The notes: generated by a model from the letters alone, not told the origin. A stretch of DNA of 64,000 nt from Phallusia mammillata (GCA_965637545.1 OZ281500.1:17174001-17238000); one strand, 5' to 3'. Numbered from the stretch's first letter, positions 26,996 through 39,600 are shown. Numbers and translations are program-made.

Positions 26996-27011
26996 ATTCT
27001 ATTTGAATAAG
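26996..27011 (+). other. Exact match to the Ciona-type spliced-leader exon, not followed by a GT donor
   Basis: The sequence reads ATTCTATTTGAATAAG, the 16-nt ascidian SL as I recall it. The next bases are GAACTAACG ATG, so this is not an intact SL RNA gene. Confidence 0.6.
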
Positions 27012-28333
27012 GAACTAACGATGGCCAGTATACCTCTTATCAGCCAATTTAAAAAACAAATAAGCCAATTATTATTTTTGCAATGGATTATGAATGATCA
27101 CGTATGGTATTATGTTACTGCATAAAAATCATCGAATTTTTTTACCAAATCGAGTGCGCATTTATTTAGTGATTAGTGATTACATTTAATAAACAGTTTC
27201 AAGCCAATTTCGTCATTTAGGCTGGGCGTACTAGTTTCAACTTGGACACACTTCATTTAGCATCACAAATGCAAATAGTGTTTGGCATGATAGTCTTGTG
27301 CTGTTTGCTGCACGTGCTACCAGCATGTGTAAGATCAGAAGCGAGAACATAAATAAATAGGCGATTCACAGATAAAACATGACGCTTGAAAATACAGGAC
27401 CGTCGCTTTTTTTCGCTCGCGCGCCTGAACTATTGCGGCGAAATGACTCGACGTGTAAAATATACAGAGAAGCAATAATGGCAAATCGAAAGTCACCTTG
27501 ACAACCACTTCGTGGCGCTGTGCAGGGGTGCCCGAACGAGGAGTGGCTCCTAAAAAGTAATCCATGGCTTTACAGTCAATGGAGTTTGTAGAACAAGGTT
27601 TTTTTGGTGTTAATCCATGTTAGCCGTATTGGTGTGCTTTAGATGTTCATCTTGTGAAACCGAGGTTTTCAATGTTCCAGTTCACGACCTTTGACCTTTC
27701 AACTTCGCGTCCGAAGCTCTTTGCTGAGATTTTGCCCGCGTGGCCGAATAAATTGACCCACTGCGGTTGCAGCGGTCAGAGAGGTACAGACGGCATCCGC
27801 AGAGCCCCTAACTGCATGAGTCCTGTTCAGTTTGATATGTTGTGAACGTTTGGGTGGCTCGAGCTGGGATTCCTGGTCGGTTTTCTGAAACCCCGATTTC
27901 TGCACTTTGGTCGATCTGAAGATAAAGTTACATAGACAAATTCATGAAAGGACGTTTTTAAGGCTCCAGTCTTTACTTGCGTTGACCCTTGTTTTTCTGA
28001 TATATTGTTTATTTTTTAAGTAAACGTTCTTATTATATTACAACACCCCTCCTATTTATTTTGTTTTCACTCTAAACTGAGGTTCCTACTCATAACTAAA
28101 TGCTACCCATAACACCAAGTCAAATCTTTTTCCAAGAACTTGAATTAACTTACTTTTTTATTCCAACATAACTTCATTGAAAAAAGGCAAAGTGACCGGT
28201 TAGTTATTTCTAAAATTTATTTCAAGTGTATGAAAATCGGGATCAATTATAAACATCTATATATAAGCTGTTACTGTCAACTTATAGAGCGAAACAATTG
28301 CCAGAAGAGCTCTATAAATTTTAAACGTCTATG

Positions 28334-31300
28334 TCATCCGAAATCAGCATGCAACACGTTAGTAAATAAACTTAAAAATGTTGTGTAACATTTTTGCTTA
28401 CTTCTGCATCTTAAAGGAGACTTTAGTCTTTTCGATTTTTGGCGATTTTTGCATTTTTTTCTCATCTTCTTGCAAGTTTTTTTGATTTTTCGTTTTTCTC
28501 TTTTCTTGGCGCATATTAATCCCGACATACATTCATTATATTCAACACAGCATGGATTACTGCATTTCTCTGCAAAAAAGAGATCATCATATAAGTCTGC
28601 TTATCAACACAACAATTCCCAGTACGTCAGGGCTTGACAGCTTTCAGCCAGCAGGCCAAATCCGTCCCGCCAAGGAAAATCATCACTTCACATATTGTCA
28701 ACGTACGCAAAAAACGTTATTTTTCAAACAATATCAATTTCATTTTATTGTTAATCTATGGCTGAATAATTATTATTGATTATATATGGCTGGCCTGGAA
28801 TAAGGAGTTAGTCTGAGAAAATTACCTTAATTTTTGCGAGATATAACAAACATAATGAGCAGTGGCCAAAAACAAAGCTTTTGTAAGAACAATGATGGCA
28901 AGATGTTCATACTAAGGTAAAATTTACTATTTCTAACGACATCTGAAAATTTATTCTTTAGCTTTGATCTTAATATTTGCTTTCAAGGCCAAGTTTAAAA
29001 ACCATGAAAACTATTCCTAAAAAAACCTAGACAGTATTACAGACACTGACAAAATAGGAAGACATTTTCCAGCGTTGGTATAGGTAACAAAAGGTTCTTT
29101 TTAAATTCACGTTTACATATTAAGATGAAAACAAGCTTACTTTTCTTAACTTCAATGCAGGTATTATTACTTCGACAGAACCTTGTATGACTGGGGCAGC
29201 GACTGTAGCAAGCACGATTATAATAATAGTAGTTGTCCATGCAGGTGTTGCATGTGCTCCGTGAATCACAAGTACGACATCCCTCCCCGCAAGCTGCAAA
29301 GAAAAAACACGTGACCGATTCAAAAACGTGACGTCATTTCGTAAAAATTATGACGTCATTTTGATCTGGGTATGGGTATTTCTTTTGATGTGGACGTTTT
29401 TTGACAACGGGGAGCTAAATGTTTGAAATTGCATTTTTTCGTACAAATAAAAACAAAATGCATCTGGTTTAAAACACCAGAAACAATGCATTCTTTTAAA
29501 TGTATGTGCGTTTGAGCAATTCAAAATTTTCCTTTTAACATGCATTTTATGTCTGACAAATGTTTCTAAAACACTATATAGTTGATGAACCCGGCAAGTT
29601 GTCATGTGACATTTCGGTGCAAATTAGTTTGTTTTTGAATAGGGTCTTGACAAAAGCATGTACAGTATTTTTAACATATCAATAAAATCCACAGAAGCAA
29701 ATTGGAGGAGAACGTTCATTTATTCTCCCATTTTCGCATTTTTCAGTCTTTAAAGGTTAATCGTGCAGAAAAAATGAAACGACTGTTTGATTTAAAATAG
29801 GCCAAATTTACGTGTTGCTGCATGCGCCAGTTTTTTTAGATCAGATAGGCGTAGTGAACTTTTTGACCTGTTAACCTTTGGACGGGCATTGACCTTGACT
29901 TGTTGACGTCACGGTCGGTGACGTGTCTTAAGGAATCGAAACCTTTTCTGGCAAGTTGATTTATGCTGTTTTGAAACATAGCAACAGAATGTCATAATAT
30001 GCCGTAATGCTATGCCGGATCGTTAAACAATGTAGTACGAGTCAAGTTGTACAAACATTTGCAGTGTATGTGGCCTTTTACCTTAAGCTTGAAGATTTTC
30101 CACTAGATAAACTGAGAAGAGAGGTCAAACCAAATATGGCACGAACCTATTTAAAGTTCCCATAACAAACCAAAATGGAGCACTGAGTATAAGAATAGAC
30201 GCATGGCATGTTATTATCATGTGGCCAGCTGAAATACTGGCTAAAAATAATACCAGAAAATTTGTTCAATGTAATCTCCGGGACAAAATAATTAAAAAAT
30301 GAAATGTAATCTTCAGGCCATGAGTTTGGGAAAAATTGGGTTTTCCAAAATCTAAAAATCTTTTGGGAGATTTTGACAGTAATCTGATACCAGTAGGCCT
30401 ACAACCCAAAAAATGTGTAGGGGTTACAACAACATAGGATCAGTGGATTTATGTTGGTCGAAAAAGTGTTGAGAAAATATGTTCATGCTTAAGATGCGCT
30501 GGGCCTCGTGATATTTATCGAGTTAAAAAGACTGATATAAACGTTTAATGCTCTTTTTTGGCGTATATAGCAACACGAAAATTTGTGGTAGCTATATTTT
30601 ATCTTGAGTTAACGGCATTTATACATGAAAAATGCCCAAACTATTTTGATAGCTGATTATTTTTCTGTTTTTCCATGTAATCTATTTTAAGGTTGCTTCC
30701 TAAAATCTAATTGTCCATAATAGTTCGCCCAAAGTGTCGCTGCTGTCAGAGCAGAGCCACAAAGCGACATGGCTGACCAAAATTTGAAATCTGACCCAAA
30801 TCGTTTTTTGAGGCCAGTTGCTCAGTCGATTGGTCAACTGAGTAAAACTGTTGCAATGCATAACTTTAGACTCATATCTATTATGTGTCGAAATATTTAT
30901 TAGTTTAAACAAATCTTTCTTCCCCAAAGAGCCAAAGAATCAAAAACATCAGACAGGAAAAAATGAGAAAAAAGACAAAAAAACCGCTTCAAGAAATTAT
31001 TACTGAATTTCTCAATATTAATGGTCAGTATTATCACAATATCTATTACACATCCTAAGTCACTAAAGTAAAAAAAATTACCAAAGCAGAGATTTTTTTG
31101 TTCGTCTTACCTTTACAGCTGTCAACCTCAGCTTTTGAACGGTGATTGTAGTGACCGTCCGGGCAGTGGTGAACGCAGTAGCTGCGTTGTGATTGCTGGT
31201 CGAGGTGGAGGTATGATTTCGCCGAATCTTGGTCACAGGAAGTACATCCGTTCGGTTGATCGGGACACTTGTCGCATGAGTTCCCACATACAAAGGCGGG

Positions 31301-34300
31301 TCCCGACGTGCCTGTGAGCAAAACAGAAGATTAAAACTTTGCCGAATGCAATTGGACCTAATGCAACTATTTGTACAAATACATGGGGATAAGGAAGGGG
31401 CATAAAGCTATTCATAACGCCACGAACGAAAAAAACAGTAAGTCGAAAGTGTCGTTTGTTAAACCCGCATAATAATTTTTATTTGCTCGTCTTTTCACAC
31501 AATGTATAATGATACGTGCAATTTGATCCGCCAGCGAACCACATTACCAGTAAAAAAATCCATTTTCGTGAACCGTTCATGTCAAATCAGACATTTCCCT
31601 TTTAATATACACATTAGCAATGTTATGCACATTAGCAAAAAATAAGCAATGTTTTTAAGTAACATTAGAAAATAAAACCGACAAAAAGCTCGCATGAGTA
31701 TCGCGTTCCTAATTCCCCGAAGTTTGTTTTGCATATTGTCACCTGGCGGACTTTCTAGCATCAAGCTGCTAAACATAAGACAGTAGTTCGCCGCTTTTAG
31801 TACTAAGTAACGCGTTTCAATCGTGCAATTACCGCAAGTGTTGGAGCGAAACCCACCACAAATGCGGTCATTAGCAACTTGATACCAAAACAAGCTGCCA
31901 GGCTTTGTATTCTCTTCAAGTAGGCGGAAACAAAAAGGTGAGACCAAAGGCACAACAGAAGTGGCCGCAAGCCTAATGACACGGAAATCTCAACAAACTT
32001 TGTCTCTTTTAAGATATTTCCAACAAAGTAATACGGAAGCCCTGGGTGGTGCAATTGCATAAATGCCATGGCAACCGATATATAGTGACGTCATACATGT
32101 GCGACGCGCGCTGGCGTCATGAAGAAGCACGACTCGGTCAGGTGCACACGTAGGAATGTTCAAAATAGGTGCAATTATCGATCAAATCACAACATAAAAA
32201 CAAATGCGCATTGTGTTTGGCGTTAAGCGGTTGTTGCAAAACACGTTTTTCTACCGCCATTACGCTCTTTTGTATAAGAGGCGTGACAAGTGTTGATCTT
32301 GTCACAGCTAAGTTGCACCTGCGCATCTTAACTGTGGATTATCTTTCCGGGGTTAGGGAGGTTTAAGCGCGATAATAACCATCCCGCGTGCACCTGGCTT
32401 GTGCGGTTAACCCCAGGGCGCGAAAAAGCCGACGCGGTTTGAAAACGTATATCCTCTGTCTCCGTGCATAATGCATGCATGGAAAAATGTATGATGCCGC
32501 GCTAAGAAAAAGGGGCTTCAAATTTTTTATTTAGGCTCCGAAGACTTAGATATGTCTGTGATAGGTTTCGTGACTCGATTATCTTACAAAATACAAAAAA
32601 AATGGGCGAGGGGGTCTACTTTACATTTACATGGGTTACGCAATTGCATGCCGAATAGTCCAATCCTGCGGTGACCTTTAAATACAGACTTTAAGTCAGA
32701 ACTGTCCCCACACTTAAGAAATATAATTCTGACATTCCCTTGCAAAACTGTTTTTGCATTGCAGCGAACGAAAGAACGTTTAGGTAAAGGTACGTTTGTG
32801 ATGCTTCGAGTACCTCGAAAACGAAGACGATGTCTTGAAATTATTGTCGGCCCGGAGCGTGGTATCCGCCGGAGGGCGTAGTGTCGGCCCCAGCTGAGCA
32901 TCAGCAGACCGAGCAGAGTCAAAATCTCGACAACCAGTCGACACGTCATGCTCGCGCCACTGTACGTCATCGATACACGCAAAAATTTGTCTAAATTTGA
33001 ACCTTATCGCTGGCGCCTGCTGCGATAAGAAACGCAGTAAAAGGTACGTAAATGACTGCAAACGCCGAAAACAGAATCGAATAACGCCGCGCCGCTGGTG
33101 GAGCAATGCAAGGGGGAAGTTCGCACATTGCTGTTGTGGCGTTTGCCCTGGTTTCATTCCATTAGGTTATCAACAGCCAGCTTGCCATTAGAGTTTTTTT
33201 GTGATAAGGTTGTGGGTCTTCGCCGAAACTGCTATCAAAATGGTATCTTAGTTTGGCCTTTGTTTGCCGCAACTTCGCTTTTAACAGCATTCAAGATCTT
33301 GACTGATGCGGTTCTCGCGCGGGGCTTTTTTACCATTTTTGCGGTAAAATGCGTGTCAAGTTTGGGTGCAACCTGTAACCTGTGCTCGATGATGAAAGAA
33401 GGACCGCTTCAAAAAAGTAGAGCAAAACCAGAAAATCAAAAGATCGGCAGTTTGTATTGATTTGAATCTGTCAAGATATAGATATCGAAAACCCCTACAA
33501 AATAGCGTAATACACTGTCGCAGATACAGCCAAATTGGGTTCCGATTTATTACTTTAAAATTGAAAAACAAATGTCATGAGATGCCCCTGGACAAAACCA
33601 AACTTTGCGCTTTCTTCTCAAAACTTCACGGACTTTCTGTTTTATCACTTAATAAACAAATATACGCAAGGTAACTTAAACATCTTATTCTGAGAAATTT
33701 AATTCAAAATATATGCAGCCTTTAAGTTATGCCAAGAGGTGCTTTTCGCAATTACACCACAGTTGATGCTTATTTCAGACACGAGGAAATTTGGATAAAT
33801 CAAGTTTCTATTTGTATTTTAAGCCAATCGATTGTGACCTGCTTCAGCGAACCGACAACAAAATTGCAAGTGGTGCTCTTTAACCGCAAACAAATTGCCA
33901 AGACGCGCGTGCTACGGCCTGCATTCCCTAACAAAGCGGACAACTTTTGTCTCACTCCATTATGGGATGAAATTACAGCGTGCTGGGGCATTAGCGCCGC
34001 AAAGAGGCCGTAATTGCGCCAATTTTCGCCTTCGAATCAATATAGCTGATGAATAATGCATTGCGACTCGCGCTGTTATTAAATAAACGTCGGAAAGTCG
34101 CGACACTTCCGACCCTGGAGCCGCCGAGATGCGATGACAAGCGACAAGCGCGCGCGGTTTTCTGTTCTAAAATGCCGCTAAATCAAAACCGACAGCGCCG
34201 GGTCAAAGTTGCGACGCGGCCCACTTGTTTTCCACTAATTCATTGTCTTTTGTTTGTGACAAGCACTGACGCAATAATCGAGCAAGTTTCGCGCGCTCCA

Positions 34301-36665
34301 GTTGTCGCGACCGGGATGATTTTTCCGCCGTCATGGGAAACTGGAACGCGCAGCGAACTTGTGTCGAACGCCGCGGCATACGTCATAAGTGATTGGCGGC
34401 GCGAATCGAAGGCGATTGGTTAATCCGGTGTTTGGCTCCCATCGCTTCCAGCGTGCTCACGAACCGTCAAAGCGCGTCTAATCCGCATTGTTTCGGCTCA
34501 AAAACCCTGCATAAATGCTCCTCGTGCCTCCGTGATGCGTCAAATCAATTATTTGCGTTGAAACGATCCGGTTCCGCATCGGGTTCCTGTCGTAGCACAG
34601 GCCGCCGACGTTCCTTACAGCCACTACAAAGTACGCGCAGTTTATCTGCATAACCGGATAAGGTAACAATACTCGTGCCTGCATAACACCGTGCTAGCGA
34701 TCCTCGATGTCGCGAAACCTAAGACACGATCAAAGCCTTGCTGTCCTCACGACGCAGCCTCACCGCGACAAGAATCCCATCCGACAGTGGACGATAAGAC
34801 GGGCTTCCAGCAGTCAGAGAGGTGCAATAATAACAAATCGCGACGCTGAAAGTCCACAAAAAAGGAGCCCTTATGTGTTAGAAGTTCTATCGGCGACGGC
34901 GCGAGACCCAGTCGAAATAAACGTGTGTCAAAGACGATTTGTGTGAAGCTTTTCAACGGGCGAGAGGCAGAAACGTGGCCGACCACTCGACTTGGGCACG
35001 TTCCCGTTTGAGGCGTTGTTGATTTCTGTGACAGCATTTTCAATTGGGGAAAAATGTAGCCTTTCGGGAGATGTTCCCAAGCATGAGAGCTTGACATCCG
35101 GTACTCCGACTTTCGTTTTCACTTTGCCGTGTCTGGGACAGCGCACGGTGCTTGCAATTGTTAGGGCGATGTCACCTGTTGATGATCAAAGGCCGCATTC
35201 CACCTTCGATTCGCCGCCCCCCAAATGACGCTTTCCCTTGTCACAGCCGCCGGGGTCGCGACCCACGCTAATGGCAACAACTTTCATGTTACCACGGCCG
35301 TGCAATGAAAAAGGGTTCCAGGTTAGGGTAAAAAGATCCCAAAGTGGAGTTCCACAGGGATCATTTTTTGGACCAAACAAGCCACAATGCCAACCATTGA
35401 AGGGTAGAATAACTGGAAAGGTATCGGGTTTTCTGTCGCATGCGTTTTAAGTTTAATCATCGATGTAGTGCCTTGGCGGCGATGCCGATTGAAACAAGAT
35501 AAGAGTAAGTACACAGAGGCCTGAGTTCAAGGGAAACCTGTAACGTACTTGAACCCTGACTTGCTTTACAAGCGTTTTGAAGCCTCGTTAAACGTTGGCA
35601 ATGAAGATTAAGATACCACATGTGAAAGGGTTGATGTCTAATGTTTCAGCGTTGCGTTTTTTCAAACCTAAACACATTCCAGTTCCTCAACATGCAGCGC
35701 AACTCAACACCACAATGCCCGACACGCTAATTTACGAGGGCACAACAGGCCGCTGGTGCTTGTGCATATACACACAGGCCACTACACCGGAGTGAGAATT
35801 GCATAAAGTCCGTGGGATAAGTTCATCGATCATATAACATAAGGAACGCAAGTTATGGTTTTTGGTAAAGGTTAAACGAAATTGAATTAGCGAAATCAAC
35901 AAAAGCCACCATGGAATTTAGCACGAAATCTACACCATGACATTGAAAGTGCTTTACATTTCTTAAGTATGACTACAACCTGTTAAGAACAAAAAATTCA
36001 ACAGTAAATTCTGAGTAAAATTGTTGTCATGCAGATATTGTTTCCTCAGTTTTGCTACAATTCATTTTCCAGTTGGACACTAATGGCGCGCGAAATAAAC
36101 CTTTCGTTACGTTGCGTCAAAAAATTCTTCGAAAAGCAACCATTTCGGGGGATTTTTGTCGATATGTACACTTAAAATGCGTTTGTAATTGCCCGTAACA
36201 AACAGAACAGACGCTAGTTAAGTTGACACGGTAAATGAATGCCATCATTTGCGCAGTGTGGTATTTACATGGCTTTGCGAGTAATGTGCACTCTCACATG
36301 CCAATGCACGTAAAACAGCGACCAGTTGGACTTGACGTGTTGCCAAGCGTTTCTTACGGCTCAGTTGGCCTTCAAACGGCCACGGGTCACTTATCAGCAC
36401 CAGTGAGGTGGTCCACTTACCTCTCCAAGCAAGGATAACTACTCTTGATCCTCAAAGTAAACGAGCTTCAATAAAGGGATTAGTAACATTGTTTAGGTCG
36501 CTCACCTCTTCGGTTCCGAGGATGCACGAGAACTCGGTTGCAGTCCAGGCAAAACGCGGCCATCAGAGCGAAAACGACGTAGCAAAGGCTGATGATGTAG
36601 CAGAGGTCTCCTCGTTTGACGGCGATCACCAGCATAGCAAACAGCGACGACTTAAGCTTGGGCAT
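28334..36665 (-). CDS. RSPO: R-spondin-like secreted protein (signal peptide, two furin-like repeats, degenerate TSP1, basic tail), about 249 aa
   Basis: Exons (minus strand): 36506-36665 (hydrophobic leader ending HPRNRR, GTGAGC donor), 31111-31311 (FU1: CGNSCDKCPDQPNGCTSC...CVHHCPDGHY), 29141-29293 (FU2: CGEGCRTCDSRSTCNTC..YYYNRACYSRCP), 28334-28569 (Cys and Lys/Arg-rich, TCKKMRKKC). All junctions are phase 1, as in vertebrate RSPO genes. RxRR sits exactly 8 residues before the first Cys, as in RSPO1-3. The first and last exons are less certain than FU1 and FU2. Confidence 0.8.
32814..32970 (-). CDS. Candidate alternative first (signal-peptide) exon of the R-spondin-like gene
   Basis: ATG at 32970 or 32949, MTCRLVVEILTLLGLLMLSWG plus an Arg-rich stretch, ending CGAG|GTACTC in phase 1, compatible with the FU1 exon. 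Confidence 0.4.
35319..35375 (+). mobile_element. Short decayed non-LTR retrotransposon reverse-transcriptase fragment
   Basis: Encodes QVRV..SQSGVPQGSFFGP, resembling the SGVPQGS(V/I)LGP motif of CR1/L2-type RTs. Other RT motifs are not recognisable. Confidence 0.4.
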
Positions 36666-39600
36666 GTTACCATCAAGTACACATAATCACCCGGTTTTGT
36701 CACACACATGCTTGAGCCTTCAGGGCAGGTACGTTGCCTAATTGCTTGCAAGACAACAGTGGGATAGGTTTAGCGCTACGCGACAGGTGCACATGTTGAA
36801 AGTAGACTAAACAAAGGCAAAAAAGATATGCAGAATATTTAAAACGGTCACACACTCCTTACACAGGCTACAGTGGTATACCAATACTCTAATCAAACAT
36901 TGACACAAAAAAACCTTAATATAGCTATCTATCTGGTCCTTACTCTTCAAAGTATAATCTCGAAACCCCAAAAGAGAATTATTTTTACGTACGCAGGTCA
37001 ACAAAAGTTAAAAGGACAATGAACTGAAATAAAATTTTTTAGATCAGTTCTGAGCCTTTCATCCTGACTGAACTTTTTTCTGACACAGTACACAAAAAAG
37101 GGATACAAATTAGTTACCTTTTTCTCTGGTACACACTAAATATGTTTACGTCTTCCAACTTAGCTTTCTGCATCTGTCCCACGCCTCGCCTGTTGGATTT
37201 AAAACATTCGATCTAGCAGCAACACGACTGATTCGCTTTGAAAAAGTTTTTGTGCAAGGGAATTACGGTCTGTACGAGTACCTACTATTAGCGGCAACCC
37301 TAAATACTTGTTTCGGTTTTAATTAGATTTTCAGCTCCTAATTTCGGTGTAATGAGGCAAAACGGGTCAAACTTTAAACGTTTTTGTAAGAACTAATCTC
37401 TAGTTCGCATTTTTACACAATTTACCAAGACATACCTTCGGATTTCGGTCAGGTTTTCTCAAAGAAAATTACATTAAAAAAAATAAACTCGTCAAAATAT
37501 TATGTATGAAATAATAGTGAATTGATATTACCATATACTAATCCACTTCATTTTACGAAAGCGGAGGCCAAGTTGTCATATGTTTATTAAGAATTTATGT
37601 GTTCGATCAGGGGTGGGCCAGACAGAACAAATAAAGCAAAGACATTGTGTCCACATGCTGATTTGCAACCCTTATGAGAGTGATCACTGATGAAAAAGGA
37701 TTGCGCAAGATTGACAAAACGCCAAGCAAAACAAGGCTTTTAGTAGCCCGAATTCCAATGCCATTCATTTCATTCTGTTACGCTATATGTTACTTAAATG
37801 CCCTGATATTGCCCTAGCTTATATTTGTCTCGAGTAAACATCGTGAAGTCGCACGGCACGCTGGGGATTGATTACCCCGCGGTTACTTGTACCCATTCTT
37901 ATTTGCAAAACTGACGAGAGGCACAGGCTGGGCTGGCGAACTGAGTTAAGTCGATCCCGGGCCGCAGTGAAAGTTATAGCTTCGATCGTGGCTCATGTTT
38001 GTCAATGCCAAACTCAAGATCATGCGATCGCGCTTTCGAAGTAAGCCGCATTTGCCACTGATCTACGATCCGTTGATATACGGACGAGGTGTGGTGGAAC
38101 TTTGAAGGATTTGGGATTCGCGCGACTTGGAATAATCAGAAAGCCGCAAAAATGTGAATAGTTCGGTTTACAAACTGAGTGCAAACTTTTATAGATGCGA
38201 TGATACTCCAACGAGGTTTGCTATACATGAGTGGTTTCATTACCTAGCTGAGCGGCTGTATTTATTTCTTTTTCAAAACAACACAAACGGGCTTAGAAAA
38301 ACTTCAGAAGTTTTTTTAAGGAAAAATGTTCTCTTTAACCAAGCGATACGCGGACAAAATGTGCTATAAAAACTTGACTATGGAATGCGCACGCCTTAGA
38401 ATAACTGTCGAGATAGACAATACAAAAGCGCCTTGCACTTGGCCCATAATTTTGCTACAAAGTAATTCAAGAATAGTGGATTCTGTTTGCGCTATGGATC
38501 GCACCTACCCTCGTGGTCAGTATTTTCTATAGCTTGTGACGATGCCGCCTTCAACTCGTTGTCATGCGACAATGGCCCTTCAATCCAACACCAACATACC
38601 TTGTTTGATCACGGCTGCCTTAAATCAACAAAGGATACAACAGAGTGCCACTTTAAACTCAACCATTTCTGGCGACACTCACCTCGACCTAAGGAATCTA
38701 ACACTTCCGCTAAACACATCTCTCGCGGATTTTTCCCTCAAAAGCCCGCTGGTTCCTGCCGCGAAGACAGCCCGTGTCTCTCACATCGCAGCGTTCCGAC
38801 AGTCACAAGCGAACCATCCGCTGTTGACTCTGTTACGCTCATCCCGTCAACGCAAATAGCGAAGAAGGGCCCAGCAACAAAGGCGGGCCGTGTACACACA
38901 CCAGCGCAATGCATTTCCAATATCAATTATCTTAAATCGCAATACGCACGTTTGATAGCAAATCTTAGCGCGATGAACCTCAGTTTACTCTGGCATTCGA
39001 CCAAGATCAACACTGTAACGTTTTCCTATTTGGTCTGCGTCTATAGGTTCTGCCTGGGATTATTTGTGCTTTATATCTTTGAGTGACCTATTTTGATTTC
39101 GCGTCAAGCGAGAGTATAGGAACTCACGCTGGTGTTAGGAAATTGAGAGCTACATTCACTAGACTTCCGATCAAGCTCTGTCCTCCCATTTTCTTTCTTT
39201 ATCGTTGCAGCAGGTGTAGGAATTATTCTGCATCTCTGAACAGTTTTTTTCTTTGCATCAATTATTAAAAGTCCACCTGTTTGGATGTCCGAAACAGGTG
39301 CTATCTGCAACAGGTGCTCTAAACGCGTAGACTGCAACGGACAAAATTCCAAACAATCTGAAAAGTTGATTGTTTTAAAACCTAACTAAAACTTCCGTTT
39401 CGTGAACACGACTTTGATACTAAAAGGAAAGGTTTTTGTTAGTTTATAACCACCTTATAACATACATACACATTTTTCGAAGTTATAAATTTTTCACGTG
39501 TTTCGTGCTTTGCTGAGATAAATGGTTAAACTGGTACACAAATAATCTGACTGAAATCTTGTAAAAGGAACACTTGTCTATAATACAACAACATCAATAA

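What the first reader, a model, noticed from the sequence alone, without database searches (positions are those of the whole stretch)
28334..31311. R-spondin that appears to lack the LGR-binding residues and has a collapsed TSP1 domain
Seen: FU2 reads CGEGCRTCDSRSTCNTC, against vertebrate CKADCDTCFNKNFCTKC, so both Phe positions are D and T. The FU1 loop LHLDQQSQRSYC keeps the Gln but not clearly the Arg of LERIGMKQIGVC. The TSP1 region has no WSxW tryptophans and is shortened, though TCKKMRKKC matches KCTVQRKKC. Known: the two FU2 Phe residues (F106/F110 in RSPO1) bind LGR4/5/6, the FU1 Arg/Gln bind ZNRF3/RNF43, and RSPO2/3 can signal without LGRs through heparan sulfate. Inference: this could be a naturally LGR-independent, heparan-sulfate-driven R-spondin, or one with a different receptor.
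Basis: partly seen in the sequence, partly recalled or inferred. Interest (0 to 1): 0.7.

Follow-up and report, generated by a model that had tools for sequence, protein, structure and literature searches.

The report
Sea-squirt R-spondin-like gene without TSP1
This sea squirt expresses a small secreted protein that keeps the two-repeat core of the Wnt-boosting R-spondins but has lost the two phenylalanines that grip the LGR receptor and the whole thrombospondin domain, so it is a natural, untested candidate for an R-spondin that works without LGR.

Summary
The window comes from the ascidian Phallusia mammillata. On the minus strand lies an expressed five-exon gene (CDS 36665-27827) for a 256-aa protein already in databases under the wrong name "FRAS1".

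- **R-spondin core:** residues 64-166 match Pfam Furin-like_2 over its whole length (42 bits, cut-off 28). The only significant solved-structure matches are R-spondin-1 and -2 (E down to 1.5e-10).
- **LGR clamp lost:** the phenylalanine clamp (RSPO2 F105/F109) is Asp130/Thr134, in an alignment with no gaps.
- **FU1 partly changed:** the Gln is kept (Q95). The Arg position is Leu90, the Met-finger position is Gln93 and the Gly position is Ser97.
- **No TSP1:** the protein has no tryptophan and no TSP1 match. FU2 is followed by 85 residues with 30 Lys/Arg (net +27) and 9 Cys.
it missed exon 1 and the last exon, and read 22 intronic codons as C-terminus.
- **"Collapsed TSP1":** only weakly supported, by exon position and Cys spacing.
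- **LGR independence:** a plausible inference, but weakened because the ZNRF3-binding face has also changed.
- **Open:** no tunicate orthologue, LGR or ZNRF3 sequence could be retrieved, so orthology and receptor co-evolution remain untested.

This is a new variant of a known kind, of moderate interest. The scan had not noted this gene on other DNA.

The parts
36506..36665 (-). Exon 1, coding part (M1-R53 plus the first base of G54). It has a hydrophobic N-terminus (cores at residues 7-16 and 21-40) followed by RNRR (residues 50-53, 36518-36507), a furin-type site just before FU1. The 5'UTR extends to about 36790.
   Evidence: The loose end of all four transcript contigs at the exon-2 junction matches ...CCTCGGAACCGAAGAG ending at 36506. 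The spliced CDS equals P0001. The signal-peptide call is heuristic, as no predictor was available.
31111..31311 (-). Exon 2, furin-like repeat 1 (T55-K120, 8 Cys). The hairpin L88-C99 (31210-31175) carries L90 (RSPO1 R66 position), Q93 (Met/Ile finger), Q95 (RSPO1 Q71, kept) and S97 (Gly).
   Evidence: Contig junctions. Pfam and PDB alignments. Codon coordinates.
29141..29293 (-). Exon 3, furin-like repeat 2 (A121-K171, 9 Cys including an extra C160). D130 (29267-29265) and T134 (29255-29253) stand where RSPO2 has the F105/F109 clamp. An N163-N-T sequon lies just before the last Cys.
28402..28569 (-). Exon 4 (K172-R227): a Trp-free Cys-rich polybasic segment with 8 Cys, 23 K/R of 56 residues, and an REKR site at 195-198. 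It occupies the exon position that encodes TSP1 in vertebrate RSPOs.
   Evidence: Contig junctions 28569 and 28402. Composition. No TSP1 hit.
28334..28401 (-).
   Evidence: All four contigs skip 27916-28401, a GT..AG intron.
27827..27915 (-). Exon 5, coding part (N228-N256 and stop TGA 27829-27827): a basic tail with C232 and an N253-I-S sequon.
27025..27826 (-). 3'UTR. Contig ends fall at 27025, 27041 and 27145, and one contig runs on further. Four polymorphic sites lie here.
   Evidence: tables 3 and 8.

Best explanation
This is an expressed, intact gene of the ascidian Phallusia mammillata. It encodes a 256-aa secreted protein derived from the R-spondin lineage: signal sequence, RNRR site, FU1, FU2, then an 85-residue Trp-free, Cys-containing polybasic tail in place of TSP1 plus the basic region.

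Shown:
- the gene model and its expression;
- the R-spondin-type FU1-FU2 scaffold, with all 16 canonical Cys;
- replacement of the phenylalanine clamp by Asp/Thr;
- the changed Arg, Met-finger and Gly positions in FU1, with the Gln kept;
- the absence of any detectable TSP1;
- the extreme positive charge of the tail.

Inferred:
- It cannot dock on an LGR4/5/6-type ectodomain in the vertebrate way.
- Its tail tethers it to heparan-sulfate proteoglycans or matrix.
- If it still modulates Wnt receptor turnover, it does so as an HSPG-tethered FU1 ligand of a ZNRF3/RNF43-type ligase whose interface has co-evolved.

My confidence in the R-spondin-derived identity is about 0.8. My confidence in the LGR-free, HSPG-tethered mechanism is about 0.35-0.4. 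The single figure given (0.55) is for the statement as a whole.
For: - Gene model: splice junctions are identical in contigs from 4 runs in 3 studies, and 12 RNA-type runs hold an exon-sized share of the region's words. The spliced CDS is identical to database protein P0001 / CAB3247060.1.
- Family: PF15913 42.2 bits (cut-off 28), covering 2-102 of 102 profile positions.
- Solved structures: the 13 best matches are all R-spondin-1/-2, E 1.5e-10 to 1.7e-5. No EGFR, insulin-receptor or furin chain appears below E 0.6.
- Fold: the ESM-Atlas model's nearest folds are the R-spondin-2, -4 and -3 clusters (TM 0.40-0.55).
- Gene structure: five coding exons with four phase-1 introns, one module per exon. 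Mammalian RSPOs also have five exons (PMC10491879).
- Clamp: RSPO2 F105/F109 'pinch' LGR5 A190 (PMC4533229). Here these positions are D130/T134.
- Tail: 30 K/R of 85 residues, net +27, pI 10.8. TSP/BR-heparan sulfate binding drives LGR-independent RSPO3 signalling (PMC5800842).
- Derived state: amphioxus, acorn-worm, oyster and Lingula RSPOs keep aromatic residues at both clamp positions and a WxxW TSP1 (supplement of PMC12111769). The Phallusia state is therefore derived.
Against: - No orthologue from any other tunicate could be retrieved. No phylogeny against other furin-repeat proteins (FRAS1, PCSK5/6) could be built.
- By the field's own definition (two furin domains plus a TSR-1; PMC3937510) it is not an R-spondin.
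- The FU1 face is also altered (L90, Q93, S97). This argues against simple ZNRF3 binding, and so against the published LGR-independent mechanism.
- The AF2 single-sequence model was unusable (pLDDT 47).
- The window shows no synteny with vertebrate RSPO loci. Its neighbours, according to unchecked first-reader notes, are TMEM144, TTC29 and POU4.
- Heparan-sulfate binding is inferred from charge alone.
Confidence: 0.55

Rival explanations
1. It is a true R-spondin orthologue that still uses an LGR-type receptor. In the fast-evolving tunicate lineage both sides of the FU2-LGR interface, and of the FU1-ZNRF3 interface, have changed together, so the missing Phe clamp does not mean LGR independence.
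For: - The FU1-FU2 scaffold and all canonical Cys are kept.
- The gene is expressed, and no variant was seen in 611 nt of CDS against 4 in 826 nt of 3'UTR (p = 0.14, weak).
- Capitella's RSPO also lacks both aromatic residues (A/S) yet keeps its TSP1, so clamp loss occurs elsewhere too.
Against: - Replacing two buried hydrophobic residues with Asp and Thr is a radical change for a hydrophobic clamp (PMC4533229).
- The LGR-type receptors noted so far in this genome by other readers lack leucine-rich repeats (unchecked notes).
- No LGR4/5/6 orthologue could be examined.
Confidence: 0.2
2. It is not R-spondin-derived. It is an independent small secreted protein built from two generic furin-like repeats, related for example to FRAS1 or proprotein-convertase Cys-rich repeats, plus a basic tail. 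It resembles R-spondin only by convergence of architecture.
For: - The source database names it FRAS1.
- PF15913 also occurs in protist and other non-RSPO proteins. Language-model neighbours are generic furin-like or VSP clusters with scores of only 0.78-0.91.
- There is no TSP1 and no conserved receptor-binding residues apart from one Gln.
- There are no sequence relatives in 1.8 to 5.8 billion proteins.
Against: - All significant solved-structure hits are R-spondins, over both repeats in order.
- The best fold neighbours are RSPO2/4/3.
- Size, the RxRR site before FU1, the N-glycosylation sequon before the last FU2 Cys, five exons with phase-1 introns and the basic tail all match RSPO.
- FRAS1 is a roughly 4000-aa multidomain membrane protein (general knowledge).
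Confidence: 0.15
3. It is a decaying or function-less remnant of an R-spondin gene.
For: Loss of a whole domain and of most known receptor-contact residues. There are no detectable close relatives.
Against: - Intact ORF with four canonical GT-AG introns.
- Consistent splicing in transcripts from three studies.
- All 16 scaffold Cys are retained.
- No CDS variants among the contigs.
Confidence: 0.05

Closest known systems
Vertebrate R-spondins, especially RSPO2/RSPO3 (LGR-independent, HSPG-dependent mode)
   Same: - Secreted protein of about 250 aa with a basic RxRR stretch before FU1.
- Tandem FU1-FU2 with the same 16 Cys, the 'NGC' and 'CPxG.Y' motifs, and an N-glycosylation sequon at the end of FU2.
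- Strongly basic C-terminus.
- Five coding exons.
- The Gln of the ZNRF3 face is kept.
   Different: - No TSP1 and no Trp.
- The Phe clamp is Asp/Thr.
- The FU1 Arg, Met-finger and Gly positions are Leu, Gln and Ser.
- One extra Cys in FU2 and nine Cys in the tail.
Invertebrate single-copy RSPOs ('RSPO4-type': amphioxus, Saccoglossus, oyster, Lingula; PMC12111769)
   Same: The likely ancestral gene: one copy with FU1-FU2 followed by a basic tail.
   Different: Those proteins keep the WxxW TSP1 and aromatic residues at both clamp positions (Y/F, F/F, F/F, F/Y). Only Capitella has A/S at the clamp, and it still has a TSP1.
FRAS1 (the name attached to this protein in NCBI and UniProt)
   Same: It contains furin-like Cys-rich repeats.
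   Different: FRAS1 is a giant multidomain basement-membrane protein. This protein is 256 aa with two repeats. The name is an automatic mis-annotation.

Membership tests
R-spondin (RSPO1-4) | Two tandem furin-like Cys-rich repeats (Pfam PF15913) with the 16-Cys scaffold | tested here: met
   PF15913 scores 42.2 bits against a cut-off of 28, covering residues 64-166 and profile positions 2-102 of 102. The alignment to RSPO1/2 chains reaches E 1.5e-10 with all Cys aligned.
R-spondin (RSPO1-4) | Thrombospondin type-1 repeat after FU2. The field's definition is two furin domains plus a TSR-1 (PMC3937510), and the 2025 survey required PF19028. | tested here: not met
   No PF19028 or PF00090 hit even at E 10. 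There is no Trp in the protein and no WSxW/CSxTCG exon near the gene. The tail has no TSP1-like sequence or fold neighbour.
R-spondin (RSPO1-4) | FU2 phenylalanine clamp (RSPO1 F106/F110) that binds LGR4/5/6 | tested here: not met
   D130 and T134 occupy these positions in a gap-free C-x5-C alignment. The clamp's role is described in PMC4533229.
R-spondin (RSPO1-4) | FU1 residues R66 and Q71, which bind ZNRF3/RNF43 | tested here: inconclusive
   The Gln is kept (Q95). The Arg position is L90 with H89 adjacent, the Met/Ile finger is Q93 and the Gly is S97. One indel lies earlier in the loop.
R-spondin (RSPO1-4) | Signal peptide and basic C-terminal region | tested here: met
   Hydrophobic N-terminus (heuristic only). 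The tail at 172-256 has net charge +27 and pI 10.8.
R-spondin (RSPO1-4) | Five-exon gene with one module per exon | tested here: met
   Five coding exons and four phase-1 GT-AG introns. Mammalian RSPOs have five exons (PMC10491879). The intron phases of vertebrate genes were not checked here.
R-spondin (RSPO1-4) | Phylogenetic placement inside RSPO, separate from other furin-repeat proteins | not tested
   No RSPO, FRAS1 or PCSK sequence could be loaded as a tool object. The word and profile searches returned only the protein itself.
R-spondin (RSPO1-4) | Potentiation of Wnt/beta-catenin signalling through ZNRF3/RNF43 clearance | not testable with these tools
   This needs a cell-based assay.
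FRAS1 | Protein of about 4000 aa with VWC, many furin repeats, CSPG and Calx-beta domains and a membrane anchor (general knowledge) | tested here: not met
   The protein is 256 aa and its only Pfam domain is one PF15913 unit.
Thrombospondin type-1 repeat | WxxW tryptophan ladder, CSxTCG motif and six Cys | tested here: not met
   There is no Trp and no motif. The Cys spacing C-x10-C-x5-C…C-x6-C partly mirrors RSPO TSP1 (C-x10-C-x6-C-x23-C-x8-C-x6-C), but it occurs in 2.4% of shuffles and was chosen post hoc.

The most novel reading that the evidence does not exclude
Ascidians, the sister group of vertebrates, carry a natural 'FU1-FU2 plus polybasic tail' R-spondin that has dispensed with both LGR docking and the TSP1 domain. 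It acts purely as a heparan-sulfate-tethered ligand of a ZNRF3/RNF43-type ligase, or of a new receptor. That would show that the LGR arm of the module is evolutionarily dispensable in a chordate.
Probability: 0.25. Interest if true: 0.65.

Novelty: new variant of a known kind. Interest (0 to 1): 0.45.

Why it matters
R-spondin, LGR and ZNRF3/RNF43 form a central control of Wnt receptor levels in vertebrate stem cells. Whether LGRs are needed is an active question.

A recent 430-species survey contained no tunicates and required a TSP1 domain. It reported the Arg, Gln and Phe-Phe positions as nearly universal (PMC12111769).

In the closest invertebrate relatives of vertebrates, this expressed gene keeps the FU scaffold but lacks the clamp and the TSP1. 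That gives a ready-made natural mutant for asking three questions:
- what FU1-FU2 plus a basic tail can do alone;
- whether ascidians have an LGR-free R-spondin pathway;
- how the module was assembled in chordate evolution.

It also corrects a database mis-annotation (FRAS1).

Tried and rejected
- **Word-index searches.** Three searches were run: the FU1 exon ORF, the whole protein, and residues 58-170. They returned nothing or only the protein itself.
- **Exhaustive phmmer.** The FU1 exon was searched against 1.84 billion representatives. The only hits were the protein itself and two junk repeat proteins.
- **Consequence of those searches.** No tunicate orthologue was found, and no alignment could be built for a tree or for AlphaFold.
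- **AlphaFold2 on the single sequence.** Mean pLDDT was 47, so I did not use the model for fold searches.
- **The tail alone.** The PDB hit to a designer PPR protein is a repeat-summing artefact. Atlas fold neighbours are unrelated helical proteins. No Pfam hit is relevant.
- **Hidden or alternative TSP1 exon.** Rejected: no W..W or CSxTCG motif lies on the gene's strand between 26000 and 37000, and all four contigs show a single isoform.
- **Paralogous FU exons in the window.** None were found by tblastn.
- **Literature on tunicate RSPO, LGR4/5/6 or ZNRF3.** I found only gene names used in passing ('Rspo3' in Ciona, 'RSPO2' in Styela) and no analysis.
- **RSPO sequences in a paper's supplement.** I compared them by eye only. 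They have no tool reference and I did not retype them, so no computed alignment or tree includes them.
- **Other exon-1 candidates.** Candidates at 31499-31580 and 32814-32949 were rejected, because the contig loose end matches 36506.
Full report
**What is in the sequence**

Each is bounded by canonical splice signals.

I laid transcript contigs from four public runs, belonging to three studies, on 27001-33000. All four gave the same junctions: 31111|29293, 29141|28569 and 28402|27915. All have GT..AG ends on the minus strand. Twelve RNA-type runs hold 10-15% of the words of 28000-32500, which is about the exon share.

The unaligned 5' ends of all four contigs read ...CCGAGTTCTCGTGCATCCTCGGAACCGAAG (minus strand). 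That sequence is the end of a candidate first exon at 36506. It has a GAG|GTGAGC donor and an ATG at 36665.

An exhaustive phmmer of the FU1 exon against 1.84 billion representative proteins returned one real hit, a 256-aa protein 100% identical over the exon. Splicing 36665-36506, 31311-31111, 29293-29141, 28569-28402 and 27915-27827 from the window reproduces that protein exactly. The gene has four phase-1 GT-AG introns of 5194, 1817, 571 and 486 bp, and the stop is TGA at 27829-27827.

The protein is CAB3247060.1 / A0A6F9DCH2 of the ascidian Phallusia mammillata. It is named 'Extracellular matrix protein FRAS1' and is alone in its 90% cluster.

**Check of the observation**

The two motif strings are correct.
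- It lacks exon 1.
- It reads through the exon-4 donor (AGAA|GTAAGC at 28402), so its last 22 residues are intron.
- The real C-terminus, NRPKCRNRGFRKPTRNPSSSHPNVHNISN, comes from a fifth exon.

HMMER aligns residues 31-168 to human RSPO2 residues 7-143. The chain numbering equals the native numbering.

Between C129 and C135 there are five residues, as between RSPO2 C104 and C110. So F105 maps to D130 and F109 maps to T134 without ambiguity.

In FU1, counting back from C99 (= RSPO2 C74):

| P0001 | RSPO2 | RSPO1 | State |
|---|---|---|---|
| Q95 | Q70 | Q71 | kept |
| L90 | R65 | R66 | changed (H89 beside it) |
| Q93 | M68 | I69 | changed ('Met finger') |
| S97 | G72 | G73 | changed |

One single-residue indel lies earlier in the loop. 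The protein has no tryptophan.

**What it is**

- **Pfam:** one domain, Furin-like_2 (PF15913), at 42.2 bits against a cut-off of 28. It covers residues 64-166 and profile positions 2-102 of 102. The separate exons scored 24.7 and 17.9 bits.
- **Solved structures:** the 13 significant matches are all R-spondin-1 or -2 (E 1.5e-10 to 1.7e-5). No other furin-repeat protein appears below E 0.6.
- **Fold:** the ESM Atlas holds a model of this exact protein (pLDDT 0.66). Its nearest folds are the R-spondin-2, -4 and -3 clusters (TM 0.40-0.55), followed by PCSK6.
- **Language-model neighbours:** only generic furin-like or VSP clusters.

Further R-spondin-like traits seen in the alignments and in published sequences:
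- an RxRR stretch just before FU1 (RNRR 50-53);
- the xNGCxxC and CPxG.Y motifs;
- an N-glycosylation sequon just before the last FU2 Cys;
- a length of 256 aa;
- five coding exons, as in mammalian RSPOs (PMC10491879).

**The part after FU2**

Residues 172-256 hold 30 Lys/Arg of 85, a net charge of +27, pI 10.8 and nine Cys. FU2 has one Cys more than RSPO2 (C160). After RNRR the mature protein would have 26 Cys, an even number. It follows that C160 may pair with the tail, but this is inference.

No TSP1 signal was found:
- No TSP1 profile matches, even at E 10.
- The tail has no meaningful PDB or Atlas neighbour.
- No W..W or CSxTCG exon lies near the gene on its strand.
- Only one isoform is seen in the contigs.

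In favour of a TSP1 remnant:
- Exon 4 sits where the TSP1 exon sits in vertebrate RSPOs, and has the same phase.
- Its Cys spacing is C-x10-C-x5-C…C-x6-C. RSPO1 has C-x10-C-x6-C-x23-C-x8-C-x6-C (sequence), and Y182 falls at the second Trp position.

That spacing pattern arises in 2.4% of shuffles and I chose it after looking. I rate 'degenerate TSP1 exon' as plausible, about even odds, but unproven. It cannot fold as a canonical TSR without the Trp ladder (established knowledge of the TSR fold).

**Comparison with other animals**

A 2025 survey of 430 species found R66, Q71, F106 and F110 'near-universal'. It contained no tunicates, and it required both PF15913 and PF19028, so it could not have found this protein (PMC12111769).

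Its supplementary sequences show these residues at the two clamp positions:

| Species | Clamp residues |
|---|---|
| Amphioxus | Y/F |
| Saccoglossus | F/F |
| Oyster | F/F |
| Lingula | F/Y |
| Capitella | A/S |

All of these have a WxxW TSP1. So the Phallusia state is derived. The combination of no clamp and no TSP1 is not seen in those species.

I compared these sequences by eye only. They have no tool reference and I did not retype them.

**How it most likely works**

Published work:
- The clamp pinches LGR5 A190 (PMC4533229).
- F106E/F110E abolishes RSPO1 signalling (PMC5800842).
- RSPO2 and RSPO3 signal without LGRs if FU1 binds ZNRF3/RNF43 strongly and TSP/BR binds heparan sulfate. R67A/Q72A abolishes this mode (same paper).

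Inference for this protein:
- Asp and Thr at the clamp make vertebrate-type LGR docking unlikely.
- The polybasic tail should bind heparan sulfate or matrix.
- The FU1 face has lost three of four key positions. An HSPG-driven mode therefore needs a co-evolved ligase interface. Otherwise the protein has another partner.

Furin-type sites (RNRR 50-53, REKR 195-198) could release or trim the tail. This is speculation.

**What could not be done**

- No tunicate orthologue, LGR4/5/6 or ZNRF3/RNF43 sequence could be obtained.
- The literature held here contains only passing uses of 'Rspo3' in Ciona and 'RSPO2' in Styela.
- AF2 without an alignment failed.
- Other readers' notes on this genome mention only LGR/RXFP-type receptors without leucine-rich repeats. 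These are unchecked leads.
- No variant lies in 611 nt of CDS against four in 826 nt of 3'UTR. That fits constraint but is not significant (p = 0.14).

**Verdict**

The gene is real and expressed, and its protein has an R-spondin-type core. By the field's definition of two furin domains plus a TSR-1 (PMC3937510), it fails membership on the TSP1 and on the clamp. I therefore file it as an R-spondin-derived variant, not as an R-spondin.

This is a new variant of a known kind, of moderate interest.

Noticed in passing
window 26996-27011 (+): The Ciona-type spliced-leader 16-mer ATTCTATTTGAATAAG is written in the genome on the plus strand. It lies inside the 3'UTR of the minus-strand R-spondin-like gene, so the two features overlap on opposite strands. 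One transcript contig (X1) runs about 310 nt beyond 27001.
   Followed up: partly
window 32296-32496 (+) and 32806-33000 (-): Two short, low-depth contigs from run X1 lie inside intron 1 of the gene. They could be unspliced RNA, DNA carry-over or another transcript.
   Followed up: no
window 36666-36700 (-): Two short upstream ATGs, each with an early stop, lie just 5' of the start codon at 36665.
   Followed up: no
window 27174, 27387, 27629, 27724: Four single-base differences between the window and the transcript contigs all fall in the 3'UTR. None falls in coding exons 2-5.
   Followed up: partly
database record CAB3247060.1 / A0A6F9DCH2 (= P0001): The public name 'Extracellular matrix protein FRAS1' is wrong for a 256-aa protein with two furin-like repeats.
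   Followed up: yes
supplement of PMC12111769 (Capitella teleta CAPTEDRAFT_mRNA225532): The annelid Capitella's RSPO also lacks both clamp aromatics (A and S) while keeping a WxxW TSP1. The paper's claim of 'near-universal' conservation therefore has at least this exception within its own data.
   Followed up: no
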